A stretch of 64,000 nucleotides of DNA. It comes from Ophelia neglecta (lineage: Eukaryota). The stretch is taken from assembly GCA_965285935.1 (NCBI GenBank), contig OZ260664.1, positions 45,694,001 to 45,758,000 of the forward strand, read 5' to 3'. Shown here piece after piece: positions 25,901 to 56,187 of this stretch; position 1 is the first letter of the stretch, and each line of letters starts with the position of its first letter. The notes beneath the pieces were generated by a model that made no database searches, was not told where the DNA came from, and worked only from the letters and a program-made list of their open reading frames with translations. Both the position numbers and the translations under genes were made by a program.

Positions 25901-26318
25901 TGTTTACCTTGCGAAGGTCATGGGCCTTGGATCTTCAAGGTTACTAACAGACTTCCATCAAACGTTCTTTATCAGACAACTTTCGTGAAAAGATACCAAC
26001 ATTTTTCATCTGAATCATTGGAAACTGCTGCTATGAACCTTTTCCAAAACTGATTAAATATAAGAGATTCAGATCTACTGTCAAATGTGAAGTAAAAAGG
26101 TATAATATAAAAAATGTGTTCCAGTCAACTATGACCTTCTTTTTAAGGTCCTACAGGGAGTTTTTGCTCTCTTGTTAAAACAGACTGAGGATAGAAATAT
26201 CAGTCATAGGCCATCTAATAACATCTACTGACATTATCATCTCTGGTTATTTATCATTTTTATGATAATTGATGTTTTTTTCCATGTTACAACTTATTGA
26301 TATATGCCAGATGTTCAT

Positions 26319-26393
26319 GTGACCGTTATCTTTTTTTTTGCAGGTAAGAAATTGTTACAAGTGAATCACCCACCCATATCATAGTGTGTAAGT
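26319..26393 (+). other. Candidate recursive splice site (ratchet point) with 44-nt cryptic RS-exon
   Basis: GTGAC branch-like motif (26319-23), then TTATCTTTTTTTTTGCAG|GTAAGA (junction 26343/26344) and a second donor GTAAGT at 26388. The 44-nt segment has stops in all three frames. Confidence 0.7.
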
Positions 26394-29300
26394 ATGTTGA
26401 AAGTCATGGTGAATTAAAAGAAATATCCAATCTTTTAACTTTAAGCTTAATATATTGCAAAACCCCATTATCATCTCATTGACTACTGTACATCCACCTA
26501 ATAAACTAGTATGTGTTCATGGAAGAGCTTTTGGCATTGAATCTTCACAGTGGTTTGAATATAACTTTAAAGTTACAATATTTTTGGAACTGGATAATTA
26601 ATCTTTAGAGCATAACATGTTAGTTCCATCTATTCCATACCATCTCCACATATTATATAATCAAACAAGAGTGTGCACAATTAAGAAATAAAAAAATATT
26701 AGAGTAAAATCTGATTGCATTTGTCTGTAATCATCCGTGGAAAAAATGTTATGTCCCTCCTTATGATTGATTATAAAGATGTCTGATTTGGTAGTTATAC
26801 AGCCTATATAGACATGAAGGAGACCTGGTAGTTTTAAAACACTCTCACAGTGTGTCATTCTTTTACATTTTAATTTAATTTCTATTGTGAAATTTTTTAA
26901 TATCCATTTTGTTACATAAACAAGTGCCAACATGACCATATTTTGACCATGTTGAAATCCTTGTCCCTGTTGGATTTTCTCTTTTTCTATACAAGAAGAG
27001 AAAAACTTTCAGTCCGTAAAGAATAGCGGAACAACTGGATTGTAAAAAGTACAAATGAAACAACTTACAGTATACTGCCCAATTGCAGTCATCAGGTCTA
27101 CTTCTCACTGTGTGCATGGATCCATCAAAATAAATCTCCCTTTACCTTTGGATAAAAGAAGGCAATGGAGTGCACTGTTGGAGAATCTAGCTCCCAGCAG
27201 ATTAGGGGATTGGGAGATATTATGCCTCGCAAGATGTTTAGCCGCAGATATCAAAGGATTTGGATTATTCTCTTTTGGTTTCCTTGGCTGGCTTGGTGTA
27301 TGGATAACCACGAGTGACTTAGTGTGTAATGTCAGGAAAAAGGATGAAGCACACTGTAGTAGTCTGAAACATTAATGCATATTACCTTGTTCTTTGAAAG
27401 TATAATACTCAATTAGGCATACCAGTTGCAGCACTAATGAAAGATGGAAATTTGTTTGGAAAAATAATTGTAGCTATGCTATATTAATTATATCCCCCTA
27501 GTAACCAGAAACCAGTTAAAAGAAAGTATAAGCTGATTTCCTACCATCTACTACATGTATATGTATATGAACGAGGCTCCTTTAGTTACAGAAGGACTGG
27601 TCTTCTTGTGTTTACGTAGGTCACCTTCAATAACATAATGTTATGTCAGGGTAAACTTAGCGGCTGAGGTGCTTTCTGTTGCACTCAGCCCAGTAGTCTT
27701 AGACAACAAGCTGTCTGGTTTACCTTCCACAGCAATGGCTACAGTAATGTCATGACCCCTAGGGGTCAGTGCTGAGCTTTCTATAATGGTGTCTAAGGGT
27801 AGATTACAGCCAGTGTGATCTTCAGTATGGTCCTTGGCTCTCCAGATGGTCATTGACCATTGATCTGGGCAAGCTTTATTAACCCAGACGTAAGTCTGCA
27901 TTGACTGTCATGGCTGCCTATTAAGATAACATTCATAGTTGTGCTATCATCCCTGATGCTAAATCTCCTTGTGTGTCATCTACATCTAAATGAGCAGGCA
28001 CACCTCAAAGAAACTCAAGCTGTCCTTTAACTTCGCACAGGAAATATGAGCCATTAATATTGTGTATTGTGCTGTCCCTTTAATATTAGTACGCCGTGAT
28101 GTCTACTCCTGTTTTCAATATGTTTGGCATTTGCCAAGTACATTTTACATGGACTTCCTATCACTAAATCAGCAGTTAGCCTTTGTGGACAAGCAATGAA
28201 ACTCAATTAAAGGCATCCTCCCATTAGGAACTAAATCAGTAGATGTAAATGTACACAGGCTATCACTCAATTCATTCAAAACAAAGGATCTCTTTTAGTT
28301 TTTTATTCTTCAGGAAACCATGAAAATAGCTTCAATGTGCATTGTCTGAATTCTGGATAACAATTTCTATATATTTCTGCATGCATTAGGCTGAACTTGT
28401 TGGCGAACAGTTTTAGTTATATCTTGACATTTGATCAACAACTCTCAATTTGCTGATGACCCAAGATCCAAATGGCAATGTGCTCTACTTGGCAAAAATC
28501 AGCAGAGAGTAAAACAATCAATCACTGCTGTAGCTCCATGCATAGGAATACATTTAGGGTTATGAATGACTCTAAGATGATTGCATCAGACAACATAAAT
28601 CAACATTGCGGCTCAGTTTGCCCAGCTTAGAATGTCCTGGGGATCTCCATCACCCGGATGCTGACTGAGATGGAAATGAGTACCACTGGGGGACGTAGTG
28701 AGCCCAGATCTCTGTGTCTGTTGACAGGTATCAGTATGCCACGGCCGTCTGCCTGTGAGTCCCCACTGACACGGGTCCTCTGACACGACAATCTGGAAAG
28801 ACCATGTACGCTGGATGAGAAAACTGTCAAATAGATTCTTACCAGTAGAATCTCTGGCTGCTAAAGCCCTATGTATCTGGTTGAGGGGTCCAAGTCGCTG
28901 TAATTGGGTATTATTGCCACTTGGACCATACTCTGGGGCCAGCCCCTTAGTAGAAGCGTGTTTGGCTGTCTTTAGTGCTCTCATTTTTGGTTACTAGATG
29001 CAATTAATGTAGCCAGAGCTAAGGTTTGGTGATGGACTGGCCTTGTAGAAGCCCTGCTTGGTGATTTGGAGAAGATTGTTCCATTTAGCAGTGAGTTGGG
29101 GCCAGCAATGGCATGTTGTCAGCGTGTTCATCAAGGGTTTTATTGTTTTCACACCACTTACATCACCTATATTGCTCTCTAAATCCACCATTTTTTTGCT
29201 CGGACTACCAATTTGGATGAATATGTGTTCCATTACATGTATTTGCGACCCCCCTTTCCAGTCCAGTCCAGTCTTTAGGGTATTAATCATGCACCTGTCC

Positions 29301-30389
29301 ATCTAGCATGGTAATCAATAAGGATAAATATGTTCAGGCTTGGCAGCAAATAAAATTAGATGACTAAGTCAGTAAAATTGGGAAATATAGTAGTGAACAA
29401 TATGTTGCTGAAAATATGTCTACACACGTAGACAAAATGCTTAAAAGTAATCAGAATTCTCTGGAAGACTTGGTATTAATTTTCATTTGCTGATATTTTA
29501 TGGAGATTATTGACGAGATCACACTGCTTAAGCACCATATAATCTTTAGTTTAATAACCGTGTCCACATCATTCTGAGCATAACATGACAATCTATTCGA
29601 TGGTTTTGTGAGGTTTATGAAGTAATTAATGAATGGCTTACAAATTTGGCCAGCTTAAACAAAGCAAATACAAATTTGCTTTTACTGGAAGATTTGCATT
29701 TATCAATCCCCACTACTTCAAAATTGCAAAACCTGAGTGTTCTTTTCATATTAGGACATGCCTGATTGGAAACATCTACTAGGATGAGCAATAACACTGC
29801 TCCTGTGGAGAGGGCATTTTTAGCCATCAAATAGTATGGTGAATATATGAGCTGAAAAAAAACAAAACCTGTCAGGAACATGTTTTACAATGGCAGAGTG
29901 TCTTATTCTGTGTCATCCAGATGGAGTTATTCTCTGCCCTGGTGGCCCTCATCCTTCCCATCGGAATGTCCACAAAGGTCCTCCAGGAGTCATTCTTCAG
30001 CTCCTTGATTTTTGCTCCATGTCTCTTGTTTCAGATGGTGTGGCTGTTTGGAAAGCAAGAAGAGCATGTGGCAATAACCACTTCACTACTCACAACCATA
30101 TATTCTTGAAATGGTCCCTGCATGAGAATAATCCTCATGGCACTGTTGTTCTGGTGTTCTTTGAGTGATTTGCACAACATCTACCTCTTATTAAGTTTAA
30201 AAATATTCCAACATTTTCTTGCAGACATTCTTCAATCAGAGTTGCATTTTTTTTCCTGAACAAATTATTTCAAGCAAAATGAAAATGCTACTATTACCTC
30301 CTTTGAATAATGAATTTACTTCGTTGTTTAGCTCATGCTTTGATTAGGTGTATGTAGCTTAACAAAAACACCTTAAAAGATTATTATGG

Positions 30390-30461
30390 TGACACATTAA
30401 CACATTCATTAATGTGTCAGAACCTATTAGTGGACGACAGAGTGATGGTCTGTCCGTCCAC
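30390..30461. other. Two adjacent stem-loops
   Basis: TGACACATTAA-8nt-TTAATGTGTCA is a perfect 11-bp stem (30390-30419). GTGGACGACAGA-7nt-TCTGTCCGTCCAC is a 12-bp stem with one bulge (30430-30461). Confidence 0.6.
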
Positions 30462-33110
30462 ATTGCCGAGTGTCATCCATTTTCTCTACACAGCCTTGGT
30501 ATAAGGCATTATGGCTGGCGGTGATATGAACGCCGAGATCCATGTTGCATGTATCACAAATTATGAGTTATTTACCTCTGGGAGCTGTCTTATGTTATTT
30601 GATTAACAAGCTGTCATTTTCGGTCCACATGACGTAGGGGGACGGAAATGAGGCATGGCACATGTAGGTCTGTTCTGGCTAGGGCACAGTTTGGCAGGCT
30701 CATGAATACAGCTGGATTACCGCTGGTCCCTCTGGTATATCATTTACAGGTACTTCTTGACTTGTTGTTTATAGCCACCTCAAGCAAGTGAACTTTTAGG
30801 TGTATTTGACATATAAGTCACACTCAAATCTTATTTTTGAAACACTGGTGAAAATATTAGACTGAAGAGAGTTAAGTAGCTCAACGCTATTAAACGGATG
30901 TATGTTTGGTCTGTCACAAATAGATTTATCACTCCCCTGGTGTTTCCGGCTATTTCCCATCCAATATTGTCTTTTGCGTATTGTTGCTCCCAGTTTGGAG
31001 TAAAGGATCTTAATGATGATTGGCCCTTATGGAATGAGCCATTTCTGCATGAAAATTGACCAGGATGGATATGTGTTTCCTTTGGAAACAAACATGTCTG
31101 ACATTTACCGGGTGTAAAAAATACCACTGGGTCGCACAACAGTACTAAATTTCTCAAACTTTGCATTATCAATTCCATGCAAGAAAAAAGATTGTCCAAT
31201 ACATGTACAATGTCAAGTGTATATATCTCTGGGGTGACAGTGTGTGTTCAAGCCTAACATTTGATGACCAGTCCGTCACAGTAACTACACCCAGCGTATG
31301 CCAGTTGAGACATTGTCAGTTGGGTTCTTGGTCAAGGGAATCACCTCTTTGCTACACAGTCGTGGTTCCTGCTCCCAAGGGCACCATGGTTTGCTAAGCC
31401 ATCAAATCCACCCTCTGACCGGTTTTCCTGATGAATGCTGAGTTTATTATAATAGCCCAATAAAACTGCTGCATCTAGTGTTACTGTTGCCTGTTAGAAC
31501 AAAGAACTATTTGCCATGGGGTGACATTTTTCTTTTGTTAGTATGACTAGTGCAATGGGAACCTCATCTAGAAGTCCAGAATACTAAAGTAGTGATGTTT
31601 ATTGAACAAACATTTGCATGTATTGATATGCACTGCAAGAAACTAACCACCTTTAGTCCTTTATAGTGCAAGTTTAAATATTGCTGCCTGAAATGTTTCT
31701 AGTTATCAGGTTGAGCTGTTGCTGTGACTACAGTTGACCTTGGAGCAGACAGACAGGTCGTGATAGCCCGACATGAATCTCAGCTAATGATTCATAGATT
31801 CTCTGCAATGGTTTACACCATCATGCACGAGACTGTCATCATTGATCATTTCTGTTACTTTCTGAGAATCCTGTTTAGTCGGCTAGCTGGCTGCATAGCC
31901 CAATGTGTAGCAGCCAAGACCCTAAGACCTGATTCCACATTAGAGTGGGTAGTGATGCTCATATAGTTAGTTTGGTGGCTGGGGTGAAAAAACTCCCTCA
32001 ACCTTCCATTATTGCTGGACAGAAGCTGCAGGGAGGCAAGCCTTCAGGAGGTGATAAGATAATACCAAACAAGATTGGCCAGCTGATACCCTCCATGACT
32101 TCAATCTGAATAAAATCCTCCTGGATACATAGAATAACCATCATGAGACACCCCTTGTGCCCGCCATTTCTCTTAAGTAACTGGGCAAGGCCACAATGAA
32201 GGATGTTCATAAGCTGAATACCATTTAAAATGCAACAAAAAGTCAGATAATTTTTTGTATTTGGAATTTTGTTATGTTAAGTAGTTTTTATTTGATCAGA
32301 ATTTTCAAACTTCTAAGATGTTGTGTGCAAATTAATATTCATCTCTTGGTGAGAAAAGATGGTGTATTCTTTGTCACTGGTTGATTGGCATTGCAAATGA
32401 AGCAAAAGACCCACATGGCTGTAGGAGGATTGGAGCATGTGGGACAAAGTAAGAACCGGAATCCACTTGTTTGAGGACAAATGTGTTTCAACCAACAGAG
32501 TAACTGAAGCTTAATACATGTACCATCATGATCGGAAGCTATCTCCCTAGACTTGGAACCAAAAATGTTGCTGTATAGCTCACTAAGATGTGTCGCGGTG
32601 CTGGCACAAACTTGTTGGTCTTGGTGATTTTCACTGCTAAATATGCCTGATGAATAATCACAAAACTTTCCATTTCATCAGGCATTTGACGTGGAACAAG
32701 AAAGGATTCTGAAGGTGATGACATGCTTAAAGGGTCATGATGTCTCAGCTGATATCATAATTTTGAATGCAAGTTTTTTCCGTTATCCAAATTCTGTGCT
32801 CATCATCAGTCGTAAAATCCATTTTTGGTCAGGGAGCCTTCTTAATTTTCAGTTGATGACCTTGCATGTATAATTGTTTTGTTAGGAGTAAGAGGGCATT
32901 TAAATTTTGCAATTTGCATCCAATTTGCCACATTGTAAAAAAGTCTTGATGAAATGGCTAAAAATCATATTATAACAACATTTGCCTCCATTGGCCACTT
33001 GTCTAGATCTATAGATGTAGGTTTACACTGTGGTTTATTATATTTTCCGGTGTTATTTGGTGCTAGCCTTGTGTCACCCATTATGTGTCATATGATGTCA
33101 CAGTTTAGCC

Positions 33111-33232
33111 AGGTAGGTCGCGACCTACCTTGGGCCTAGGATTGCTGTGGTTGAATCGCAGGTCTTGACCATGTCATGTTCCGGTGGTGTCAGTTCATCA
33201 TGGTCGAGACCGGCATAGCACCCGCATGCGCC
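33111..33232. promoter_or_regulatory. CpG-rich palindrome/hairpin island (putative cis-regulatory or structured RNA element)
   Basis: Perfect 20-bp palindrome AGGTAGGTCGCGACCTACCT (33111-33130). A 13-bp stem GGTCTTGACCATG/CATGGTCGAGACC with one G-U pair (33161-33211). CCGCATGCGC motif. CpG is locally dense. Confidence 0.35.
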
Positions 33233-33959
33233 GCTAGTGGAGCAGGTGTCGTCTGTTAGGCTGGTTGGATATGTACAGAGCTAGTGGGGAGAGCCTCCCT
33301 GCATGATTGATTCCTGGACTGGCCTCACATTGACTGACTTCCATCATGGACACCTACTTCAGCCTGCACAAATATTAACTCTACATGGGAGCATGGCCTT
33401 TATTAATATTTCCCCTAAATGGAGAGATTTGTTCTAGAATGGGCCAGAACCCAGTTTGACATTTGATATCTTCACTTGACCAGTGCCATATTTAGTACAG
33501 CTTTGCCGCCAACCTCAGACATAGGTGTACTAATTTATTTTTTGCCCTGGAATGAAAACATGTCTGAAAAAAGTGCAAAACCACAAATTTTTAATAAAAA
33601 GGACCAAATCAATGTAATTGTGATGTGAAACAGTATATTAAGTACATGTGTACTTGGTTATTTGATTTATGGGCCACTAAGACTTGGGTGCTCTCCTGCC
33701 AAACATTCTGTGGACGTCCTCCGGGATCAGCCATGACATACCAAGTAGGGAACTGAGGGGGATCACTGCCAGGAGGATGATAGCAGACGTCAACAACAGC
33801 CATTATGTCAGCTTTGTAGCTAACTTGCCATTAGCTATAAAAAGTGAGCAGTTGTAACCCTGTCATGTGTGCTATGATTGATAAGTTGCCGCTTCCTATG
33901 GGGGTATTTCTACTACTCGCCCAATTGTTCGGAATCTACTTGTTTTTTTCTGTGACCAG

Positions 33960-34070
33960 CTATCTTGGCATTTACCCAGTTTCTACACAAAGAGCTATAA
34001 AATACTTTATTATGTCAAGTTATTCCAAACTGGACTGATTTTAGTCATTAGCACGATCTCTAGCAGTCAG
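33960..34070 (+). other. Possible 111-nt cassette exon (weak)
   Basis: Acceptor TTGTTTTTTTCTGTGACCAG| and consensus donor CAG|GTAAGT. Length is a multiple of 3 with one open frame (LSWHLPSFYTKSYKILYYVKLFQTGLILVISTISSSQ). No recognisable homology. Confidence 0.2.
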
Positions 34071-36958
34071 GTAAGTTTTAGCTAAATGATTGAAGTGTCC
34101 CCGATGTTGGGAGGTTGTGTAGCATGCATACTCAGGAATCTCCCATCGGCTCAATACATTGTCTGTATTCTAATTCCATGCTGCCTTCAATGTCTCCAAA
34201 CTTCACCTTCAGCTTTACACCTTTTTTTCTCAAATAGATGAGTTTCCAATGTTGAAGGGAATACATAGGCAGTGTGCTTGTTATTCTTTTCCATACTATA
34301 AAAGGTTCAATGTAAGATTTACAGTACTAGTAGATAACTAATTCACAACATAAGTATTATATAAAGTGTAATGTTAGGTAAGCCAGTAGCCTGCTTCATG
34401 ACACAGAACAGCTTCTGTAATAAATACTCATGTAAGATATAATTACCACAGTATCAAGATGATGTACATGTGTACCTGAAGACAAATTTACCTATTTCTT
34501 GCAACAATGAACGTGAATAATAAAGGAAAAAAAAATGTTAGGCTGGCATTAATCAAGATCAAGAGAATGAAGCGAAATAATTGCTGCAAAATTTATGATA
34601 GTATTGAAATGCATATTTAATGTTTGACTGAGTTTCTCTTAATTGGAGCTTTTCAATCAGTACTGTTGAGTGGGGAAGTATTATAGGGGAACAAATGACT
34701 TTCTTGCAGACTACTTGGCAGTGAAGGCAAGATTAGTGAGAGATATGCTAACCTGTCGACCACTAGTTTTTCCTGAGTGGAGCCTGCTGAAAAGAGAGGT
34801 GAATGAGCTGAGATGGTTGCAATTTGTCAGTGGTGGACATTTATGGAGGCCCTGGCAATGAAGTCCATGGCCTGCCTGCGACCCACATGTGGCTCCTTGT
34901 GCCACAGCCTTCAGCCAACGCCACCCACAGCCATCCTCGGCAACCTTTCTCCGACCCAGATAATACTAATCAGCATCACAGATTAGCCTCTTAATGGGCT
35001 TAACCTATTGTTGTTGACAGGAGCATGTCCAAGTACCTATGCTTAGAGCCATGGAGTGCAGGCGTCTACAATCCTTGTAGTGGCTGGTAATGAAATAAGG
35101 CTTGCCACAATCCACCAACTCATAAAGCCAGACACTTTATTGGCCTTGCAGTTGCTTTTATTTTTTCCTCATTTTTGAAACTAATGCAAAGAAAATGTCC
35201 TCTACCTTGTGGGATGCACAGTTTGTTAACAAGCTTCACAGTTATACTCATTGCTATAGGCTGTCCTTGACTATTTCTGTCTGTTATGTGCTAGCAGCTG
35301 CCATTGCTTCATTGTTATGCTCGAAAGCTTTGGCAGATTTCTCCGAGGAGTCCAGATCAACTTCAGTCTGCGGAGGATCCACTGTAAATTACAAGTAATA
35401 TTGGCAGACCCATTTTGCTTTTCTCTTTGCGCAATGATGATTTCCAAGGATATGCTGTACCCGTGAAGGCTGTCAGAGGTGTAGACATTGTGTGTAGATG
35501 TCCTTATTGGTAATGCAGCCAGGACAGGCCTCAGGGGTGTCACATGACGTGACACAACATGCATCCAGACATACAGGTGGATAGTTCTCACAGGCCCTCT
35601 AGACTAATAGACAGACAGAATAGTTGACAAGTATTCTTCATAGGTTCCAAAATACATGATAGATCTTTATTTTATGGCACACTCTCCACTCTGGAAGTGA
35701 AGATATATTTGAAAATGATGTTATGTATCCCAGGTGGAATTACTACAGATTCCAAAACTGTCTGAGGATATTTATGTACATCTACTATAGATGAGCATTG
35801 ATTTGGTGTAATCGATGCTTGTTTAAATCAGGAGAGTATATGAGCAGATGGATGAGTAGCTATGTGTTAAGCTGCAGGACCCTGATATTGTAAACCATAA
35901 AGTGGTGAGGGCCAGGCCAGCCATTTGGCCTGATGCAAAGCAGACAATCCCATTTAATGGCTTCCTGGTGTTTAATGGTGGCACTGTGATTTCCCTAAAA
36001 TTGGACAAATTGAAGTCTGTTTGTAGCCCAATGTAACCACACAATAGAAATGATTGATCCAGAAATTAAGTTTCTTAGAGTAGAAAACCTGTGCTATTAA
36101 ACAAGTGAAGCAAGGCCACGATTCCCCCTTCCCCGCCTTGACAAATGAATGTCTTGGCAGGCCCAGAATAGAAATAAGCTTCCCTTCTACATACAGGTAA
36201 TGCTGATGTGAAATCTGCCATGGAATAATCTATGGAGATCCCTGCACAAAACTCCCATTTCTCTCATACATCTTCATAACAAGTGATGCTGGGTTGAGGA
36301 GATAAGGTTACAATGGCTTTATTCTGATACCAAATAATGACAAATCTGAACTCATCTTCTGAAACTGGAAAACCACCCTTGTGGTGCATGCTCTCCTCAA
36401 TATAGCTCTGTGGCAGGCACACTGAATTATGTCATGTGCATTGAGAAGTTCATGGAGAGATGTAATGGCATTGCTCTTTTATGGTTAGAATGTTCATGTA
36501 CGCTGTTTGTATTCTGATGATGCATTCTGTCCAAAATTACCAGAAAATGTTATAAACTACATAAATAAAACAGGAATGTCTATTTTTTAAAGATTTTTAT
36601 GGGCAGTTAGGAGGAACATGCACTAACTAGGTCAATAATGAAACAAATTTTTATTGTCATAGACTGGACTTAGCTGTATTCCCCTGAGTCTTAATTAACT
36701 CTACTTTACAGGTTAGTAATGAAAATTTGTGAGGTAAATGTAGTCCTATCCTTTGTCCTTCCTCTGCTGTATTCATTAGAGAGTGGATTTGACATTAATC
36801 AGGTGGGGAGAAGTGTGATAAGTGACACATCACGCCCAATTATTGAGCACTCTGGCCATCATTAACCCAGCTAGTGTAGACTTCATCAGACCCTAACTAG
36901 AATGTTAATGTACTACATAGTAGTACTTGTTCCCTTTCACTACTCTCCTCACACTGTA

Positions 36959-37136
36959 TAATGAAACCTGCAAATTAAGACCACCAAAGGGACTGGAGAA
37001 TACTGATCTGATTTTGGAGGTTGTCCGTTTAGACAGGTTATTTTACATTGAAAGTATACAGCAGCGTCCTCATATTGGTGGTCTGAATTAACAGGTAGTC
37101 TGATTATAGAAATTGCCTTTAAGGCTGGTTTCACTG
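36959..37136 (-). mobile_element. Tc1/mariner-superfamily MITE, copy 2 (opposite orientation to 8001-8144)
   Basis: TA|TAATGAAACCTG ... CTGGTTTCACTG|TA. Its reverse complement shares AATAACCTGT.TAAAC.GAC.ACC, CAGTATT..CCAGT.CC and CAGGTTTCA with copy 1. Confidence 0.8.
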
Positions 37137-40100: not shown

Positions 40101-41044
40101 GGTATATTCTTTGGCAAGTCTTGAAAATTCAATAATTCTGGTTTATAAAAACTGTTTATATTGTTTAGGGTGAGTGTTGTGCCATGGGCCCAGCCAGGCA
40201 TGATGCCAGCCCGCTCCATGGTACCTAAGGTCATGTACCCCGCTCAGCCAGACAATAGCCTCAGCAGGCCAAGTGTCTCCTTTACTCAAACTTATGGCCG
40301 GGGAACGTGCCTATGGTCAATCTGTCAATGTGTTTCATCTACCCAGAGTGTGAATTAGCATCCGAATTCATTCCACTTCATGATCCATGCGCTGTAAAAG
40401 AAAATACTTAACTGGCTGTGTTGATCTAACTGTTTATGAGGTACAGGTACATGTGAGTGAGATGGCTGGTCTTTGGTGATCACTGCAGGCCTTATGCATT
40501 AACTCATCATATCGGCAAATTAGTCCTTCTGATAGTAGTTTTAAAAATGTCATTTATCCCATTATTGCAGTATTTCATCCATTAATTTCATCGTAATGGA
40601 TTAATGGTGAAAAGAGATACTAAGACCGCTAAATGGCTATCATACCTGGCTGGCAAGAGTCAGTGGTAGTAAACTAGTGCAAATTTGATTGATCTGTATT
40701 TGGTATGACGAGGATTTATGTTGCCTCTTGGCCTACAATCTGGAGAGACTACCATTTGCTGGCATACATATAAATGTTATAGCCTCCCACAATTGGCTGC
40801 CAACTCCTCAATCCAGTTCCATCCAGCTGATGAGATGCAAAATACATTATGGTCAGCACTCCCTGGGTGAGCATTACTGCCTTTCATCAGCATGGCAGTT
40901 TTGTGGTCGGTCTCGGTGGTGCTGCTGGGCCATCTGCTGACTTAATTGAGAGCTTTGGAGTTAAAATCTACAGTAAACCCTTGATGTAGGGTCGTTCTTT
41001 AAGTTTTACATTATTGTGCAGACTATCATATTTAAAGTTGGAGT

Positions 41045-41555: not shown

Positions 41556-42314
41556 CAATATTGTACACCTTCCAAAAACCATGCCCTTGCTTCAAATGCA
41601 CTTAAGAAATACTGATGTATTTTTGAAAAGCAGCCATTTCACAATTAATTTCCATACATGTTTTGTGCTAGTTATCAGCCCAATAAGGTATCTTTGCTAG
41701 TGCTTTAGGGCATCCTTCGTCTGTAATCAGTGTTATTATTCCAGTAAGAACAGACAATTCTGGCAAACAAACCTGTGTGCATGTATACATGTACATGAAT
41801 GTCCTTGAAGGCTCATATATTCATGGATGTGTCAGTATTATCTTTTTTTTTTCTTTTTTTTTTATTGGAAAAGCTCTACTCTGTTTAATTGCTCCCCATC
41901 CAGTAACAATTTAAAATTGTTTTTATTCCATATTTCTATAGAAGCTAATTCCTTGATGGGAAACTTCATGCCAACCAGTGTTGTGTTCTCTCCCTGTCTG
42001 TGCAACTATGAATGTTGCTTTTGCTGAGTAATGGGCAAAATGTAAAACTTGGTTTTTTGCTTTTCTCTTTTTCCATTGTGAGACATATCATGCTGTCTTT
42101 CTCTCTTTAAAAATATCTAGTAAGATATAGCTGTCTGCACAGAAATATGCTCTATGAAGCACCTTGAGTTCTTGAGTCATTAGAGTGTACTAGTCTAAGA
42201 GCAGGAGACACCTGTTATGGTTTGAGTGGAATTAAAACTGCTCTAAAACAATTATGTCTGTCTTCTGGAGGGTATTGAGAATAAGTCAGATACTTAAAGA
42301 GACTATTCCACTTC

Positions 42315-42488
42315 ATGTACATGAACATGTAATGACTATACCATTCTTGTTCATGTAATGACTATACCATTACATGTACTTGTAATGATTTACCGTTACA
42401 TGTACATGTAATGACTATACCATTACATGTACTTGTAATGACTTTACCGTTACATGTACATGTAATGACTATACCAGTACATGTACAT
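42315..42488. repeat. ~27-bp tandem repeat with alternating A/B units, built on TACATGTA
   Basis: TACATGTACTTGTAATGA(C)TTTACCGT alternates with TACATGTACATGTAATGACTATACCA(T/G). Contains TTACATGTACATGTAA palindromes. Confidence 0.9.
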
Positions 42489-48400: not shown

Positions 48401-49327
48401 CTAGGAAGAAAAAGAACATGATTGAACCTGTAGATGGCTGCTACCTGTCACAAATAAAAGGCATACTGACACACTATATCGTCTGGCATGTGCATGTGCA
48501 CATTTACGTAGATGTACACATGTGTGTATGTGTGTACACACTCATGTCGTGTCTTTGTACATGTACATGTAGTGTAACCATCATATTGTTTTTTCAGTTC
48601 AGTTTGTGCCTTATTCTAGAAGGCACTATTTGTAAACTTATCCCCTGCTGGTTGTTATTTTGTAGATGATATAATGTTAGTTGTTTATTAGAATAAGTGT
48701 GATATGAATATGCTTTGTGTATTAATTTGATGGGAAAATATCACCTTCTGTGTATTGTGTCTATAAATATCTGAGCTAGGGGTTATTGCCTCCAGAATAA
48801 GACAAGGTATTAATGATTTATATGGCATGAAAAAGATCTTGACAAAATGTCACACATGTAATGCGGAGTAGAGCAAAATTTGTTCTTGCTAGCCTCAGAT
48901 TCATGTAGGATATATAGCTACATGTACATGTACATAATCGGTTGATGCAATTTATTCCTGTGGCTATGGGTTTGGAGATTAGCTGTGTAATGGTTTACTA
49001 GTCCTAAGCGCACTTAGTAAAACAGTTACTCTGGAGACTTTCAGGTACAAATAATTCAAATCGATCCAGCTTGAGGCGAAGTCAACAGCAAATGCAGGCT
49101 GAAACAATGTAAACAATCTGGGCATGTAGAACGTAGCACAAATCAGTTCCAGCCAACAGCCAGGCTTATGGCATGTTGCATGAATCATTGAACACTAAAC
49201 TAGGCAACGTTGAGAGGCCTGTGTGACAGGTTTGAGCTAAATCTGATAAAGATTCACAACCCCACCTGCTGCTTGGCTTTTCTAGTAAAACATTTAGGTG
49301 ACTGTCGGTTTTAATGGGCTTTATGGT

Positions 49328-49356
49328 GGGGGGAGGGGGGTTTGGGGGGGAGGGGG
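49328..49356 (+). other. Canonical G-quadruplex motif
   Basis: G6-A-G6-TTT-G7-A-G5. Confidence 0.8.
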
Positions 49357-49364
49357 CATCTCAA

Positions 49365-51370
49365 ACTCTGTATGACCCAGGGACATGACCCAGCAAATGT
49401 GGGCCTCAGAGACTGTCCAAGGGGACATCTGTCTGACTGGGGGAAATGACCCAGTCAGTGAGAACCATATACATGAGCCTCAATGTCTTTCACAGGGGAC
49501 AGGCCCAGTCAGTGTGAACCTCAACATCTGTCTGACTGTTGAACATGACCCAGTCAGTGTGAGCTTCTAACCTCTGGCTGACCGGAAGACATGTCCCAGT
49601 GAGTGTGAAGCCCAAACCTCTGTCTGACCGGAAGACATGTCCCAGTGAGTGTGAAGCCCAAACCTCTGTCTGACCAGAAGACATGTCCCAGTGAGTGTGA
49701 AGCTCAAACCTCTGTCTGACCAGAAGGCATGTCCCAGTGAGTGTGAAGCTCAAACCTCTGTCTGACCAGAAGACATGTCCCAGTGAGTGTGAAGCTCAGA
49801 CCTCAGTCTGACCGGAAGGCATGTCCCAGTGAGTTTGAAGCTCAAACCTCTGTCTGACCGGAAGGCATGTCCTAGTGAGTGTGAAGCTCAAACCTCTGTC
49901 TGACCGGAAGGCATGTCCCAGTGAGTGTGAAGCTCAAACCTCTGTCTGACCGGAAGGCATGTCCCAGTGAGTGTGAAGCTCAAACCTCTGTCTGACCAGA
50001 AGACATGTCCCAGTGAGTGTGAAGTTCAATCCTCTGTCTGACCAGAAGGCATGTCCCAGTGAGTGTGAAGCTCAGACCTCAGTCTGACCGGAAGGCATGT
50101 CCCAGTGAGTTTGAAGCTCAAACCTCTGTCTGACCGGAAGGCATGTCCCAGTGAGTGTGAAGCTCAAACCTCTGTCTGACCAGAAGACATGTCCCAGTGA
50201 GTGTGAAGTTCAAAACTCTGTCTGACCAGAAGGCATGTCCCAGTGAGTGTGAAGCTCAGACCTCAGTCTGACCGGAAGGCATGTCCCAGTGAGTTTGAAG
50301 CTCAAACCTCTGTCTGCCCGGAAGGCATGTCCTAGTGAGTGTGAAGCTCAAACCTCTGTCTGACCGGAAGGCATGTCCCAGTGAGTATGAAGCTCAAACC
50401 TCTGTCTGACCGGAAGACATGTCCCAGTGAAGGTGAAGCTCAAACCTCTGTCTGACCGGAAGGCATGTCCCAGTGAGTGAGAAGCTCAAACCTCTTGTCT
50501 GACCGGAAGGCATGCCCCAGTGAGTTAGAAGCTGAAACCTCTGTCTGACTGGAAGGCATGTCCCAGTGAGTGTGAAGCTCAAACCTCTGTCTGACCGGAA
50601 GGCATGTCCCAGTGAGTATGAAGCTCAAACCTCTGTCTGACCGGAAGGCATGTCCCAGTGAGTTTGAAGCTCAAACCTCTGTCTGACTGGAAGGCATGTC
50701 CCAGTGAGTGAGAAGCTCAAACCTCGTGTCTGACCGGAAGGCATGTCCCAGTGAGTGTGAAGCTCAAACCTCTGTCTGACAGGAAGGCATGTCCCAGTGA
50801 GTGTGAAACTCAAACCTCTGTCTGACCAGAAGACATGTCCCAGTGAGTGAGAAGCCCAAACCTCTTGTCTGACCGGAAGGCATGTCCCAGTGAGTGTGAA
50901 GCTCAAACCTCTGTCTGACAGGAAGGCATGTCCCAGTGAGTGTGAAACTCAAACCTCTGTCTGACCAGAAGACATGTCCCAGTGAGTGTGAAGCTCAAAC
51001 CTCTGTCTGACCGGAAGACATGTCCCTGTGAGTGTGAAGCTCAAACCTCTGTCTAACCGGAAGGCATGTCCCAGTGAGTGTGAAGCTCCAACCTCTGTCT
51101 GACAGAGGGTCATAACTCAGCCAGTGATAGCCTTAACCTATGTCTTACCGGGGGACATAACCTACCTAGTCTGAGCCTCAACATATGTCCTGTTGGAAAC
51201 GTCCCCAGGAAATGAAAGCCTCAAAGTCGGTCCCCGTGACATGACCCAGCCAATGTGAGCCTTAGACCTGTTTGACTGGGGGACATGACCCATTTGATAT
51301 GAGCGTCAGCATCTGTACCGGGGGACATGACACTATCAATATAAGCTTAAAACCTTTGTGTCGGGCATGC
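49365..51370. repeat. 46-bp minisatellite: ~33 homogeneous core units (about 49560-51105) flanked by degenerate units
   Basis: Unit GTCCCAGTGAGTGTGAAGCTCAAACCTCTGTCTGACCGGAAGGCAT. 49591 to 51066 = 32x46+3, matching three 47-bp variants. Diverged GACATGACCCAG..GTGAGCCT copies lie on both sides. Confidence 0.97.
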
Positions 51371-51981
51371 ATCCTGGAAAAGTTGCCTTTTAAGTATATT
51401 AGTTAAGTGGTGTTTTACTCCAGCTAAAACTATTCAGTCCAGTTTTAGTTCACCTCTTGTAATTCCATAACTGCATAACATTGAGATTAAAAAAGTCATG
51501 GATATTAGAGTTCTGTGTACTAGGCAGACAAAGCTAAGTGGGGTCACCATGCTGTGTCTGTGTTGTAAGTTATGATAACAAATGTATTAGCCTTAGCTGC
51601 ATTAAGCTATTGAAATATTAATGTTATTCACATTTGACAAATTGGCTGACTAAGTAATGAGTATATTATTGTTCTGATGGTGATTCTGAACTTACTATTT
51701 GAATAAGGTACCTGCCTCTTGTTGTAGGTGATTTGTTAGGATATCATTGTGAAATGGCCAAACAAACAGAATGACATTAACAGACCATTTATCAACTTGA
51801 AATATACAACCTATACAATATCTGGGCAAATATTAGACAATCAATCTCTATTTTGATGGATGAATTTATTTTTAAACTGTCATATTTGGTGTTTCATTCA
51901 TTATTTTCAACAACCCATTGCTGCAGTTATCAAATAAAAGAAGAAAGCTTGGATGGAAAAGCCTAGAAACTTTTTTTTGTG

Positions 51982-52195
51982 TATAGTATTACCCTAAATA
52001 ATCTAATAGAAAACACTTATCTAATAGAGGATGCACTCTTAGAATTAGAGTAAAGTTGGACATTGCTTATGCATTTTTATAATTAAGTCTAACAGGGGTG
52101 ACTTTATTATTTCAATATAAGATTCGCACAAAAGTTTTTTTTTTCTGGGACTGACAAATGAAAAAAGCAAGTCTTCTATTAGATCAAATACAGTA
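51982..52195. mobile_element. Degenerate pogo-like MITE (tentative)
   Basis: Left ATCTAATAGAAAAC (52001-52014) is inverted relative to right GTCTTCTATTAGATCAAATACAG|TA (52171-52195). The left end has the form TATAGTATT. Confidence 0.4.
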
Positions 52196-55100
52196 ATTCC
52201 CTATTGTCCTGAGGCACATATTGCATGACTCTATGTATTCAAACATGGACATCAGAGTCAATGCAATTTACTGTTGGCATAAAAGCCAAAGTCATCATTG
52301 GTGCACAGATTGCTTTTCCAGTAGATTCATACAAGAACCAGTACGACTAAGCCTTTGTTGTACAAAAATGGCTGCTGCCTTTATATGATATGCACCTATA
52401 TATTGATGGAGTCTTAGTCTGTCAGAGGAATCTGTGTTAAGTCTGGGCCACTTTAAAAACATTTTGCTGTCAGTAGCTAGGATTAAGATATACTATTAGG
52501 CCTTTGGTGGTGGTCTTGTAGTTGGCCTGACACTGAAGGTAATTGAGTCATTTCCCCATGTGGAAGTAGGTTGCTCACATGCCACCGAGCCATGTTTTCT
52601 TGGCTGTAGCCACACTGTGTTGGCTCATAGTGTTCTCAGCTGGCTAACACAGGACAACACATCAATACCTCAGTGATGATATCTCCTCTAAACACACATA
52701 TGTGATGCCAGAGAATCTCTAATTTACACAGCACCGCCTTCTTTATATTCTCTAACAAAATGGTACAGTATTTACTGTAGATCTAAGGTAATCACCATAC
52801 TCACATTAATTGCCTTACAAGTTGGTGGCCAATTACTTGTACAAGGAAGGGTAGCGTCAGCAGACACAGCCTGGCTCGAGTTCCCTCCCACCTTGTCCTT
52901 GGTAATCCTATGGCTGAGTGTGGAAGACAACACTGTAACTGGGTTGCCTTGATTAAGTGTGTTGATTAAGTGCCTTGATAAACACATATATGGTATGATA
53001 TGTATTTGGCTGTTAACTTGCCAATTTGAAGGTAGATGTAGATGTTGTCGACTGGCAAAGCGGTGGTGCCAAGATCTACGGTCAGTAGCAATACAGCTTA
53101 CATCTTATGCTACGTCTAGGCAGTGCGATGTATCCGTGTATTCACCTATTGATTGTGCTGTGTTGCCCGCGCAAGGCAGGCACGGGCGTGCCATCTGCCA
53201 ATATCTCACTAGAAGGGCTGCTTGGCCGTGACCATCCTCGCCAGACCTCTAATGGACTTGTACATGCTTTCTGCTGCTCTCTGTGGCCAAATTGGCTAAA
53301 GACGCATCAGAACCAACACAAAGCCAATAATAATGATGACAGGGACCTATGAATGTGACACCAAATAATATCACTCATGCAAGCTTGTTAACTTTGATTC
53401 TTTCAGAAATAGTTGAGTGCAATTCTTATGGTAAATTCATTGAAACAAGTTCTTTGAAGAATTGCTCAACTGTAGTTTGTATATTTTTTGCTCATTGCTG
53501 GTGATGAATACATGCATTTCTGAGTGGTTGATCCATTTGTTAACACTAATCTCATTTAATTGGCTTTTAAAAGGTAGTGATTTGGTTGTCAGTTTTTAAG
53601 TAAAAACCAGTGGAATTCCTCGATGTTATAAAGCCAGGTGCTTAGAATAGTGTTTTCCCCTGAGTAGCCATATTCCAGGTGCTTCTCAGAGAATTTCAAA
53701 TCCTTGATGCCTCCATTGTGTACATTAAGGACTGCAGTTGGCTCCCTAAGTTAAGTTTTGCCATGGTATGTGAGAGTTCTCCACACGTGAGCCTGTGTGA
53801 CTTGACAGGGCAATCGGGCTGGGAGGAGAGAGAGCTGAGGTAGGGCGGCAGCGGTGGCCGGTCATGTGTGAGTGGCACTCTGGGCCGGAGAAAGCCAAGT
53901 CTCCCTGACCAACAGCAGACTAATGGGGCACATGGCGCACAGTGCAGGACCAGCCGCCTGGAAATCATTGCCTGACAGGGTGGGGTCACAGCAATCACTA
54001 CCAAATAATACTACTTCTAATTGCACCCAAGGCTGTACAATAGAAATCCACCATCAGACAATAGTAATGCGGTGGATGTAATCTGGGCATTTATCACCAA
54101 TCATAATTCACTGGGTAATCAATTGGAAAATTGAGGCAGAACACTGCCCAGGTTACGGCAGCCATGATGAAGGAAAGGATTTTTATTTGATAATGAAGAT
54201 AGGCGAATACTGAAAACGAGATTACACAATGATATGACATGCCTTATGAAATATTAAAACTGCACAAGAAGGCTTCAATCAATATCTTTTACACGGCAAA
54301 ATGCTCCACTGATTGTTGACTTCTTATGTACTTGTGAGCTATGATTGATAACTGTTGGCCATTTCCCCACGGACTAGCTTGTTATTATAGGAAGACTATT
54401 ATGTACTTGTCACCAAAGTTGATTGCTAGTGTAATCTATTAATTCATTAATGCAGGGCATGAAATCCGATACTAATTTATTAGATTGACCTCCATTACTG
54501 ATACCTTTGATGATTGCCTAGAACTGAGGCCTTTCATGAGCGGAGGTGCCCTGTGATTATCCCACTAAGACAGGTGGTTATCTTATTTGTTTGACCCTGC
54601 CCTCATTACATTGATTTCAATTGATTTCTTGATGAGCTGATCAGCCCTCAAATGATCTTCATATACTCCCCCTAGGAGGCAGACGCTGGTCCCGGAGGTT
54701 AAAGGTCACATACATGATGCATGTATTATATAGAGCTGTGCTGTATCTATGGGTTAATAATCTACCCTAAATGGTTATGTTCTGTTTTAATCAGTTGTCA
54801 TTCAGTGTTAGTTTATTTGACACTTCTTTTGACTCTAAACTGAACAGAGTTGATGGTTGAGCATCCCGTTGAAGGAGTATACGCCCTATGTCTTTATCCT
54901 GGGATAGGAGGGTGGGGCCCAGGTAGTAAACAAACTTCTCTCTGACTGAAAGTCTTCATAAAAGCAGACTAATATGATAAAAGGGGCTGAAGAAAATGGG
55001 ATGGTCTCTGGTAGATAATTTTGGGAAAATGGGACCCATAAAGGAGCTTTTATTAAAAAGAATAAGGCAAAAGAAGTAATACAGTGTGAAAAGTATGGGC

Positions 55101-55330
55101 ATTGCCAACAATATTCTCTATTGAACATTTGGGTAGGCCTTTAGCCTTTTAAATTATTTTGCTCAGATAATAAAAAAATACAATTCTGCTCTATTAATAT
55201 ATGTGGTAGTTTATATAATAGAGACTGTTAAAATAAGGCCTTATCTCATAGAAATAAACAGAGTGGCCCTATGTGCTATGTGATAATTTGGGCATGAACT
55301 GCAAACATGTTAGAGAGAAAAATTTCCCAT

Positions 55331-55469
55331 ACAGATATTGGTTAAATAATTTAATTTCTCAGGACTGTGACACTCATGAAACATTACCATGACAAATACA
55401 CTCAAAATATTAATACAGATAATATCCAAACTGATTATTTAATTTCTCCAGACTGTGGGACTCATGAAA
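55331..55469. repeat. Local direct duplication, 88-bp offset
   Basis: TTAATTTCTCAGGACTGTGACACTCATGAAA (55351) vs TTAATTTCTCCAGACTGTGGGACTCATGAAA (55439), 27/31 identical. Confidence 0.75.
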
Positions 55470-56097
55470 ACTTGATGTCACAAAAGCCAAAAATTGATTA
55501 TTAGCCATGCAACCATTGATTGATCTAAATGTTCCACCTACCTGACCCCATCAGTTTACCGGCGAGGATCAGGTGGATAAAACTAATCATATGACTATAG
55601 AATCTCTCTATCGACTGCTGTTTAGGGACCATGCGTTTTGGAATTGACAAGAATTAATTTCTTTAGTGTCTCAGGTGGGGTACCCCACAAACCATACATC
55701 AAACCCTCGGTGTATTAGGGTATAATCTAGGTTATGTCCAGAGGAACTCAGTAATCGCACCCTAGGGAGTGGCGCACCATGTGTGAGCAGGGACACTTAC
55801 AATAAAAGAAAGATCAAAACACTGAATAAACAAATCATTACATACTAGCAAATAATATCAGTACACATATTGTACTGTTGAAGCATATCATTTCTGTAAA
55901 GAATTTCTGTTTTGATGAGACTATATTATAGTATTATCAATATGTAGAATACATAAATCTGTAATTGTATATCATGGGCATACTCTAATTATATATAAAT
56001 GTGTTTAAAACATTTTAAGGTGCTGCTACTACTTACAATGTGTTTTCAGTGTGCTTCTCATTATCATATTTGTTACACAGTTGAATATTGTTGATGA

Positions 56098-56187
56098 TTT
56101 TAAGTTCTTTTTTTTCTTTTCCAGGTAAGCTTCTTGTAGAGATGACTGTTGCCACACAATTTCAATGTAATTCATCCAGTAGTAAGT
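56098..56187 (+). other. Candidate recursive splice site (ratchet point) with 57-nt RS-exon
   Basis: TTCTTTTTTTTCTTTTCCAG|GTAAGC (junction 56124/56125) and a second donor GTAAGT at 56182. The 57-nt segment has stops in two frames and is open in one (KLLVEMTVATQFQCNSSS). Confidence 0.7.

What the first reader, a model, noticed from the sequence alone, without database searches (positions are those of the whole stretch)
26319..56187. Paired recursive-splicing modules subdividing a giant intron in a probable non-model invertebrate
Seen: two + strand sites 29.8 kb apart share the same three-part architecture: a long T-rich tract with CAG, an immediately regenerated donor GTAAG, and a second GTAAGT 44 or 57 nt later. 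I found no coding exon around them. Established: this is the ratchet point plus short cryptic RS-exon arrangement known from Drosophila long introns (e.g. Ubx) and long vertebrate neuronal genes, where the downstream donor allows exon definition. Inference: a very long intron here is removed stepwise. By rough composition estimate CAGGTAAG alone is expected about once per strand in 64 kb, but two copies each with a strong pyrimidine tract and a donor about 50 nt away is very unlikely by chance. I am not aware of recursive splicing being described in mollusc-like lineages.
Basis: partly seen in the sequence, partly recalled or inferred. Interest (0 to 1): 0.85.

Follow-up and report, generated by a model that had tools for sequence, protein, structure and literature searches.

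The report
Candidate recursive splice sites, YIPF5-like intron
Two "acceptor fused to donor" splice signals, each followed by a tiny stop-containing pseudo-exon, sit in the right orientation at about one third and two thirds of a 104-kb intron of a Yip1-family (YIPF5-like) gene, so this invertebrate (probably annelid) intron is very likely cut out in three steps as in flies, although no RNA data exist to prove it.

Summary

The whole window lies inside one 103,776-nt, phase-0 intron of a + strand Yip1-family (YIPF5-like) gene. Its flanking exons lie 12.7 kb upstream and 27 kb downstream of the window. The two sites are the two best acceptors among 6,429 sense-strand AGs in that intron. They cut it into pieces of 39.0, 29.8 and 35.0 kb. 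Both short exons carry in-frame stops. Both loci are single copy and unrelated to each other.

Genome-wide, the strict motif is 4.3 times commoner than its reversed control. 17 of 38 such sites have GTRAGT 28-57 nt downstream (background 1.7%). Neighbouring sites within 100 kb are always on the same strand (11 pairs against 0).

So these sites belong to a real, selected class built like Drosophila ratchet points with cryptic RS-exons. Their use could not be tested, because the only public runs are DNA. The scan had already noted the same kind of site on other DNA of this genome (THOC2, RYK and others). Verdict: a credible, RNA-untested new member of a known kind, of moderate interest.

The parts
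1..64000 (+). Interior of the host intron. The full intron runs from 12,689 nt before the window to 27,086 nt after it (103,776 nt, phase 0) in a + strand Yip1-family (YIPF5-like) gene.
   Evidence: Exon B (..ELGINFDHIKQK, donor AAG|GTAAGG) is at window coordinates -12724..-12690. Exon C (TVVVLNPF..DTDLAGPLVFCLAFGGSLLL) is at 91087..91197. The two exons are contiguous in homologues (alignment A2). tblastn maps exons B, C, D and E, all on the + strand.
26329..26343 (+). Site 1 acceptor: 11-nt pyrimidine run, G, then CAG.
   Evidence: Acceptor score 10.66, rank 2 of 6,429 sense-strand AGs in the intron.
26344..26349 (+). Site 1 regenerated donor GTAAGA. It becomes AAG|GTAAGA once exon B is joined to it.
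   Evidence: The regenerated donor scores 6.3, against 0.7 for the RS-exon donor.
26344..26387 (+). Cryptic RS-exon 1, 44 nt. It shifts the frame and has TGA as codon 7 in the phase set by exon B.
   Evidence: read directly from the sequence.
26388..26393 (+). RS-exon 1 donor GTAAGT (context TGT|GTAAGT).
   Evidence: The 44-nt distance lies inside the genome-wide 28-60 nt range.
56105..56124 (+). Site 2 acceptor: 18-nt pyrimidine run ending in CCAG.
   Evidence: Acceptor score 14.22, rank 1 in the intron and in the 264 kb. It is one of 47 genome-wide hits of the strict pattern.
56125..56130 (+). Site 2 regenerated donor GTAAGC. It becomes AAG|GTAAGC after joining to exon B.
   Evidence: It scores 7.0, against 1.6 for the RS-exon donor.
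56125..56181 (+). Cryptic RS-exon 2, 57 nt, with TAG as codon 5 in the phase set by exon B.
   Evidence: read directly from the sequence.
56182..56187 (+). RS-exon 2 donor GTAAGT (context GTA|GTAAGT).

Best explanation
Both sites are intronic recursive splice sites (ratchet points) with short cryptic RS-exons. They lie in the 103.8-kb intron between the exon ending ..INFDHIKQK and the exon starting TVVVLNPF.. of a + strand YIPF5-like (Yip1 family) gene.

Inferred mechanism, by analogy with Drosophila and vertebrates:
1. As transcription proceeds, the very strong pyrimidine tract and AG of site 1, together with the GTAAGT 44 nt downstream, are recognised as a tiny exon.
2. The upstream exon is spliced to 26344, removing 39.0 kb.
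3. The junction AAG|GTAAGA is now a strong donor that out-competes the weaker RS-exon donor (TGT|GTAAGT). The next splice therefore removes the 44-nt exon together with the next 29.8 kb and lands on 56125.
4. The same happens at AAG|GTAAGC, and the last 35.0 kb is removed by splicing to the true acceptor.
5. The mature mRNA carries no trace of these steps. If either RS-exon were retained, its in-frame stop would make the mRNA a nonsense-decay target.

Shown here: the motifs, host gene, orientation, intron size, rank of the sites, stop codons, single-copy status and the genome-wide signature of the class. Inferred: that splicing actually uses these junctions.
For: 1. Host intron and sense orientation: exons mapped; B|C contiguity in homologues; Yip1 identity.
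2. The sites are the rank 1 and rank 2 acceptors of 6,429 sense AGs in the intron (14.22 and 10.66). The gene's real acceptors score 4.1-7.5 and the antisense maximum is 8.8. The coincidence with strong donors has P about 8e-6.
3. They cut the intron into 39,033, 29,781 and 34,962 nt. Two random cuts are this even with P = 0.016.
4. Both RS-exons have in-frame stops, and 44 nt also shifts the frame.
5. Regenerated donors score 6.3 and 7.0, against 0.7 and 1.6 for the RS-exon donors. This matches the donor-competition rule in PMC8605326.
6. Both loci are single copy and not homologous to each other.
7. Genome-wide, Y12-N-CAGGTAAG has 47 hits against 11 for the reversed control.
8. GTRAGT lies at +25..64 in 17 of 38 non-redundant strict sites against a 1.7% background (P about 1e-20), and in 6 of 35 sites with 10-11 pyrimidines (P about 4e-6). 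Distances are 28-60 nt.
9. Position +6, which was not part of the search pattern, is T in 68% of strict sites.
10. There are 11 adjacent same-strand pairs within 100 kb against 0 opposite-strand pairs, where random placement gives 0.76 pairs.
11. The other haplotype at site 1 keeps YAG (CAG to TAG), the T-run and both donors.
Against: - There is no RNA evidence of any kind. No RNA run exists, and X1-X3 are DNA contigs with flat depth and no joints.
- Both regenerated donors lack the +6 T that 68% of the strict class have (A and C instead).
- Site 1 has only 11 pyrimidines. The class with 10-11 pyrimidines is not enriched over the reversed control (37 against 54), so taken alone its motif is weaker evidence.
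- In the other haplotype, 22 of the 27 nt just upstream of site 1's T-run are deleted. A branch point would be expected there. Variant density in the module is no lower than in the flanks, so no constraint is visible.
- The splice-site scores come from a generic matrix typed from general knowledge, not trained on this species.
- Conservation in related species could not be examined.
Confidence: 0.62

Rival explanations
1. The two segments are ordinary alternative (poison or regulatory) cassette exons of the YIPF5-like gene, or exons of an unannotated + strand non-coding transcript. They are spliced only at their acceptor and at the downstream GTAAGT. The GT at their first base is never used as a donor.
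For: Both segments are bounded by a strong acceptor and a GTAAGT. Both contain in-frame stops, as poison exons do. A third exon-like + strand segment lies between them at 33960-34070, with a CAG|GTAAGT donor and an open frame. The sense strand of the intron carries several other strong acceptor-like sites.
Against: This does not explain why both exons begin with GTAAG directly after the AG (P about 8e-6). It also does not explain why the strict class shows T at +6 in 68% of sites, a donor feature outside the search pattern, or why the distance to the next donor is so narrow at 28-60 nt, far shorter than ordinary exons. The RS-exon donors have poor exonic positions (TGT| and GTA|) compared with the regenerated donors.
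Confidence: 0.15
2. One or both sites are chance matches with no function. The most likely case is that site 2 is real and site 1 is a chance motif next to a poly-T run.
For: Sites with only 10-11 pyrimidines are no commoner genome-wide than the reversed control (37 against 54). Site 1 shows no reduced polymorphism and has a 22-nt deletion just upstream in the other haplotype. Poly-T runs are common in this AT-rich DNA.
Against: Site 1 also has GTAAGT at +44. Only 1-2% of 40-nt windows hold a GTRAGT, against 17% of the 10-11 pyrimidine sites and 45% of the strict sites. It lies on the sense strand of the same intron, 29.8 kb from site 2. It is the second-best acceptor of the intron. Together with site 2 it makes near-equal thirds (P = 0.016). 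Same-strand pairing within 100 kb is a hallmark of the class (11 against 0).
Confidence: 0.1
3. The modules are recognised by the spliceosome but act as decoy or anchor elements. They would hold U2AF/U2 and U1 on the nascent intron to suppress cryptic splicing, regulate intron retention or protect against premature cleavage. They would not serve as actual recursive intermediates.
For: This uses the same sequence features as above. Decoy exons and U1-dependent protection of long introns are known in other animals (for example PMC7373989, seen in the listing but not read).
Against: A decoy needs no exact juxtaposition of AG and GT. The fused SA|SD with a strong donor consensus is the specific signature of re-splicing (PMC8605326; PMC2773006).
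Confidence: 0.06

Closest known systems
Drosophila intronic ratchet points with cryptic RS-exons (Ubx, kuz, Bx; Burnette 2005, Duff 2015, Joseph 2018; Joseph & Lai 2021, PMC8605326)
   Same: Fused acceptor|donor of the form (Y)n-NCAG|GTAAG. Location deep in a long intron on the sense strand. More than one site per intron. A short cryptic exon of about 50 nt closed by a second donor. Exon content out of frame or stop-containing. Regenerated donor stronger than the RS-exon donor. Density of about 2 sites per 100 kb of intron, like the fly value of 2.2 in PMC2773006.
   Different: Different phylum (spiralian, probably annelid). The host is a housekeeping-type Yip1-family trafficking gene rather than a long neuronal or developmental gene. 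The donors here end in A or C rather than T at +6. There is no RNA, lariat or genetic evidence, and no conservation data.
Vertebrate recursive splicing through RS-exons in long genes (Sibley 2015; Blazquez 2018, PMC6224609)
   Same: An RS-exon defined first by exon definition, then a choice between the regenerated donor and the RS-exon donor. The outcome is poisonous if the exon is retained.
   Different: In vertebrates fully cryptic intronic sites are few and RP motifs are not enriched in long introns (PMC2773006). Here the motif class is enriched and clustered as in invertebrates.
Computational RP-site enrichment in large introns of insects and sea urchin (Shepard et al. 2009, PMC2773006)
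   Same: The same kind of purely sequence-based evidence: excess of AG|GT ratchet motifs on the sense strand against a control.
   Different: That study covered fly, mosquito, bee, beetle and sea urchin, with no spiralian. It did not look at RS-exon donors or same-strand clustering.
Poison or decoy cassette exons
   Same: A short, stop-containing exon bounded by good splice signals inside an intron of a coding gene.
   Different: Such exons have no reason to start with a donor consensus. Here both do, as does a genome-wide class.

Membership tests
Intronic ratchet point with cryptic RS-exon (Drosophila-type recursive splicing) | Juxtaposed splice acceptor and donor: pyrimidine tract-NCAG|GTRAG | tested here: met
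   Acceptor scores are 10.66 and 14.22, and donor scores at the same junction are 7.15 and 7.85.
Intronic ratchet point with cryptic RS-exon (Drosophila-type recursive splicing) | Lies within a long intron, on the sense strand of the host gene | tested here: met
   103,776-nt intron of a + strand Yip1-family gene. The sites are 39.0 kb and 68.8 kb from the donor.
Intronic ratchet point with cryptic RS-exon (Drosophila-type recursive splicing) | Short cryptic exon (about 50 nt) closed by a downstream donor | tested here: met
   GTAAGT at +44 and +57. The same feature is seen in 17 of 38 strict sites genome-wide at 28-57 nt.
Intronic ratchet point with cryptic RS-exon (Drosophila-type recursive splicing) | RS-exon content non-coding: out of frame or carrying premature stops | tested here: met
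   In the phase set by exon B, TGA is codon 7 of RS-exon 1 (44 nt, which also shifts the frame) and TAG is codon 5 of RS-exon 2 (read from the sequence).
Intronic ratchet point with cryptic RS-exon (Drosophila-type recursive splicing) | Regenerated donor stronger than the RS-exon donor, so the exon is skipped | tested here: inconclusive
   6.3 and 7.0 against 0.7 and 1.6 with a generic matrix. The direction fits, but the matrix is not species-trained and strength alone does not always predict the outcome (PMC8605326).
Intronic ratchet point with cryptic RS-exon (Drosophila-type recursive splicing) | Splicing intermediates: upstream exon-RP junction reads, lariats ending at the RP, sawtooth intron coverage | not testable with these tools
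   No RNA run for this organism. The three runs that hold the locus are DNA, with flat depth and no joints.
Intronic ratchet point with cryptic RS-exon (Drosophila-type recursive splicing) | Strong evolutionary conservation of the SA|SD motif with poorly conserved exon content | not testable with these tools
   No related animal genome is within reach. The only comparison is the second haplotype at site 1: AG|GTAAGA, the T-run and GTAAGT are kept, -3 changes C to T (still YAG), and 22 nt upstream are deleted.
Ordinary cassette or poison exon | Exon is spliced in at its acceptor and its 3' donor only and appears in some mRNAs | not testable with these tools
   No RNA data.
Transposon- or repeat-borne splice motif | Multiple similar copies in the genome, or homology between the two sites | tested here: not met
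   Each 401-nt locus matches only itself in the 762-Mb assembly. The two sites align only at the splice motifs.

The most novel reading that the evidence does not exclude
Recursive splicing through exon-defined cryptic RS-exons operates genome-wide in a spiralian (annelid). At least 25-40 ratchet points carry 28-60-nt RS-exons, often several per intron. This would make the ratchet point plus RS-exon mechanism ancestral to bilaterians rather than a fly or vertebrate peculiarity. It would also show the mechanism serving a housekeeping trafficking gene with a 104-kb intron.
Probability: 0.55. Interest if true: 0.55.

Novelty: new member of a known kind. Interest (0 to 1): 0.42.

Why it matters
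Recursive splicing has been demonstrated only in flies and vertebrates. Elsewhere there is only a motif count in three further insects and a sea urchin.

If these sites are used, they extend the mechanism, including its exon-definition step through tiny cryptic exons, to the third great bilaterian branch (Spiralia). That would argue the mechanism is ancestral.

In practice, such sites should be known to annotators. The 44-nt and 57-nt segments look like exons to gene finders and would poison the YIPF5-like reading frame if annotated as such.

The genome-wide signature found here gives a cheap, RNA-free way to list candidates in any new genome. It has three parts: a strict motif, a second donor at 28-60 nt, and same-strand clusters.

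The result is not surprising to a splicing specialist, and it remains unproven without RNA.

Tried and rejected
- **RNA evidence.** The look-up of sequencing runs listed no RNA run. Read laying on 24000-29000 showed X1-X3 to be genomic contigs of one sample, with flat depth and no joints. Expression, junctions and lariats are therefore untested.
- **Repeat or transposon origin.** Rejected: both loci are single copy and are not homologous to each other.
- **Hidden coding exon or ncRNA at the sites.** Rejected. ORFs of 80 aa or more in the window are satellites or junk. The ten ORFs nearest the sites have no convincing Pfam match; the only hit is Lactate_perm at E 0.002, below cut-off. Rfam gives nothing.
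- **Six-frame genome search with Pfam Yip1 (PF04893).** It found nothing because the exons are too short. The gene was instead identified from exon ORFs, a phmmer search of exon D and alignment to full-length homologues.
- **Base-composition skew as a transcription-direction test.** Only a weak T>A trend on the + strand from about -12 kb to +108 kb. Not relied on.
- **Relaxing the motif to 10 pyrimidines.** This almost abolishes the enrichment over the reversed control (84 against 65). Only long tracts, or tracts plus a second donor, mark the class.
- **Literature.** No paper in the library connects recursive splicing with molluscs or annelids in substance.
- **Joined exons.** The joined coding sequence was never built or searched.
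- **Complex prediction and structure tools.** Not relevant, not used.
- **Organism.** Not determined here.
Full report
**Observation**

Searches show the two modules exactly as described.
- Site 1 has an 11-nt pyrimidine run (26329-26339), then gCAG, then GTAAGA at 26344. A GTAAGT follows at 26388, 44 nt later.
- Site 2 has an 18-nt pyrimidine run (56105-56122), AG at 56123-56124 and GTAAGC at 56125. A GTAAGT follows at 56182, 57 nt later.

CAGGTAAG occurs three times on the + strand and never on the - strand of the window. The third copy, at 34068, is an ordinary-looking CAG|GTAAGT donor without a pyrimidine tract.

**Is it more than chance?**

I fetched 100 kb on each side of the window (the window is G000:C7:45694001-45758000).
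- Of 55 AGGTRAG sites on both strands of these 264 kb, only the two reported sites combine a pyrimidine-rich upstream 19 nt with a GTRAG 15-150 nt downstream.
- I scored sites with a simple generic position-weight matrix. Its frequencies come from general knowledge of metazoan splice sites and were not trained on this species.
- On that score, the two sites are 2 of the 3 + strand AGs (of 15,306) that reach 10 or more as acceptors. At the same junction each scores 7 or more as a donor, which only 18 of 15,117 GTs do.
- About 0.004 such coincidences are expected in the region, so P for two or more is about 8e-6.
- Each 401-nt locus matches only itself in the 762-Mb assembly. The two align to each other only at the splice motifs. 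So they are neither repeat copies nor duplicates of one another.

**Host gene**

Stop-to-stop ORFs of the 264 kb revealed exons of a Yip1-family gene on the + strand, given here in window coordinates.

| Exon | Coordinates | Content |
|---|---|---|
| A | -14404..-14200 | MTIDYS..EPPLME, phase 1 donor |
| B | -12724..-12690 | (E)LGINFDHIKQK, donor AAG\|GTAAGG at -12689 |
| C | 91087..91197 | TVVVLNPF..DTDLAGPLVFCLAFGGSLLL |
| D | 92710..92891 | SGKVHFGYIYG..LGYCLLPM.. |
| last exon | about 96846..97001 | mapped by tblastn |

- Each motif occurs only once in the region.
- Exon D alone gives a weak Pfam Yip1 match, E 0.006, below cut-off as expected for a fragment.
- The ESM Atlas features of exon D point to Yip1 clusters, with a best score of 0.94.
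- A phmmer search of exon D against 1.84 billion representatives gives 144 hits at E of 1e-10 or better. The full-length hit P0007 (252 aa, 75% identical over the exon) carries the Pfam Yip1 domain above cut-off.
- In alignment A2, homologue P0014 reads ..GINFKHIWQK directly followed by TLTVLNP... Exons B and C are therefore adjacent in the protein and no coding exon is missing between them.

The interval -12689..91086 is therefore a single phase-0 intron of 103,776 nt, and it contains the whole window. From memory, the protein resembles human YIPF5; I treat that name as a lead and 'Yip1 family' as the tested statement.

**Fit of the sites to the intron**

- Both sites are in sense orientation.
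- They are the best and second-best acceptors among the 6,429 AGs of the intron's sense strand (14.22 and 10.66).
- They are clearly stronger than the gene's real acceptors (4.1-7.5) and than anything on the antisense strand (maximum 8.8).
- They divide the intron into 39,033, 29,781 and 34,962 nt. Two random cuts give a largest piece this small with P = 0.016.
- In the phase set by exon B, RS-exon 1 reads GTA AGA AAT TGT TAC AAG TGA, and its 44 nt also shift the frame. RS-exon 2 reads GTA AGC TTC TTG TAG. Retaining either would truncate the protein.
- After joining to exon B the regenerated donors are AAG|GTAAGA and AAG|GTAAGC (6.3 and 7.0). The RS-exon donors are TGT|GTAAGT and GTA|GTAAGT (0.7 and 1.6).
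- This is the arrangement that Joseph & Lai describe for Drosophila. They report a cryptic RS-exon of about 50 nt that is generally out of frame and is skipped because the ratchet-point donor wins the competition (PMC8605326).

**Genome-wide class**

- The strict pattern Y12-N-CAGGTAAG has 47 hits in the assembly, against 11 for the same pattern read backwards. Site 2 is one of them.
- I fetched all hits and removed poly-C runs and repeat copies, leaving 38 sites.
- 17 of the 38 have a GTRAGT 25-64 nt downstream of the junction, at distances of 28-57 nt. The background is 1.7% of equal-sized windows elsewhere in the same loci (P about 1e-20). Neither the upstream side nor the antisense strand shows such a peak.
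- Position +6 of the junction donor was not part of the search pattern, yet it is T in 68% of the sites. This shows selection on the GT as a donor.
- Relaxing the tract to 10 pyrimidines adds site 1 but nearly removes the overall enrichment (84 against 65). Sites with only 10-11 pyrimidines are therefore mostly noise.
- Even so, 6 of those 35, including site 1, have the second donor at 31-60 nt (P about 4e-6).
- From these numbers I estimate that a site with 10-11 pyrimidines and such a donor belongs to the real class with probability of about 0.9, before counting its position.
- Among 73 non-redundant sites there are 11 adjacent pairs within 100 kb. All 11 are on the same strand. Random placement gives 0.76 pairs, with a maximum of 5 in 5,000 simulations.
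- Pairs of same-strand sites tens of kilobases apart, like the one in this window, are thus typical of the class and point to shared long introns.

**What could not be shown**

- No RNA run is on record for this organism. The three runs that hold the locus come from one sample and study. When laid on 24000-29000 they behave as genomic DNA, with flat depth and no joints.
- They do reveal a second haplotype. At site 1 it keeps the T-run, AG|GTAAGA and the GTAAGT, and changes -3 from C to T (CAG to TAG, still a valid acceptor).
- That haplotype also lacks 22 of the 27 nt just upstream of the T-run, where a branch point would be expected. Variant density in the module is not visibly below that of the flanks, so there is no sign of constraint at this scale.
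- No related animal genome can be reached with these tools, so conservation is untested.

**Comparison with what is known**

- The modules match the defining sequence features of Drosophila intronic ratchet points with cryptic RS-exons, and of vertebrate RS-exons.
- The defining functional features (intermediates, lariats, sawtooth coverage) and evolutionary conservation are untested.
- Shepard et al. 2009 (PMC2773006) already found RP-site enrichment on the sense strand of large introns in fly, mosquito, bee, beetle and sea urchin. The density here (2 per 104 kb sense, 0 antisense) is like their fly value of 2.2 per 100 kb.
- No paper in the library treats recursive splicing in molluscs or annelids.
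- Other notes of this scan report the same kind of site elsewhere in this genome (THOC2, RYK, ephrin, Eph and others) and take the genome for an annelid. I did not test either point.

**Verdict**

It is a new member of a known kind, possibly the first lineage outside insects, sea urchin and vertebrates with this signature. Interest is moderate.

Noticed in passing
window 33960-34070 (+): A third exon-like sense-strand segment lies between the two sites. It has a pyrimidine tract-CCAG acceptor (score 5.8), 111 nt open in the phase set by exon B (37 codons, no stop), and then a consensus CAG|GTAAGT donor (score 8.7). It could be an in-frame alternative cassette exon of the YIPF5-like gene or a pseudo-exon. 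It has no recognisable homology.
   Followed up: partly
L011:4179-6950 (-), i.e. 3.0-5.8 kb upstream of the window: A single-exon 924-codon ORF on the opposite strand lies nested in the first segment of the same 104-kb intron. Pfam finds LRR_8 (E 2e-42) plus an I-set Ig domain, with weak sub-threshold matches to transmembrane-segment families at residues ~390-420. It looks like a LINGO/AMIGO/Kekkon-like LRR-Ig membrane protein gene.
   Followed up: partly
window 11293-13651 and 49504-51103: Two GC-rich satellites sit inside the intron: a 52-bp unit with 45 copies (96% matches) and a 46-bp unit with 35 copies (92% matches). They create long spurious ORFs. Smaller arrays lie at 41045-41455, 42318-42488 and 63788-64000.
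   Followed up: partly
window 26305-26341: The second haplotype in runs X2 and X3 has deletions totalling 22 nt at 26305-26330 and a C>T change at 26341 (CAG to TAG), right at the upstream edge of site 1. Overall haplotype divergence in 24000-29000 is about 1.3% SNVs plus many indels.
   Followed up: partly
L015:5440-5733 (-), about 35.4 kb downstream of the window: A second Yip1-like ORF (..CVLGYCVLPLALALV..) lies on the opposite strand 2.4 kb beyond the last YIPF5-like exon. Two Yip1-family genes appear to lie tail to tail.
   Followed up: no
L055 and L056 (G000:C9:7408290 and 7450261, - strand): Two strict ratchet-type sites lie 42 kb apart with nearly the same module (..ctttcttcttttgCAG|GTAAGT, second donor ACA|GTAAGT at +39 and +40). 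The module may have been duplicated within one intron. L034, L036 and L066 share identical flanks and look like a dispersed repeat that carries the motif.
   Followed up: no
L017 (window coordinate about 115957, - strand): Another pyrimidine tract-CCAG|GTAAGT junction lies on the - strand, inside what looks like a - strand amino-acid-transporter-like gene (ORFs at 122.9-124.7 kb). No second donor lies within 150 nt.
   Followed up: no
flanks L002-L021: Gene neighbourhood read from ORFs only: an SLC22-like transporter (-, -72 to -66 kb), an ISWI/SNF2 ATPase (+, -50 to -43 kb), a TBCE-like LRR/ubiquitin-like gene (+, -28 to -23 kb), ribosomal protein L9 (-, -21.6 to -19.7 kb), glyoxylate/hydroxypyruvate reductase-like (+, 126-128 kb) and alkaline phosphatase (-, 147-159 kb).
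   Followed up: no
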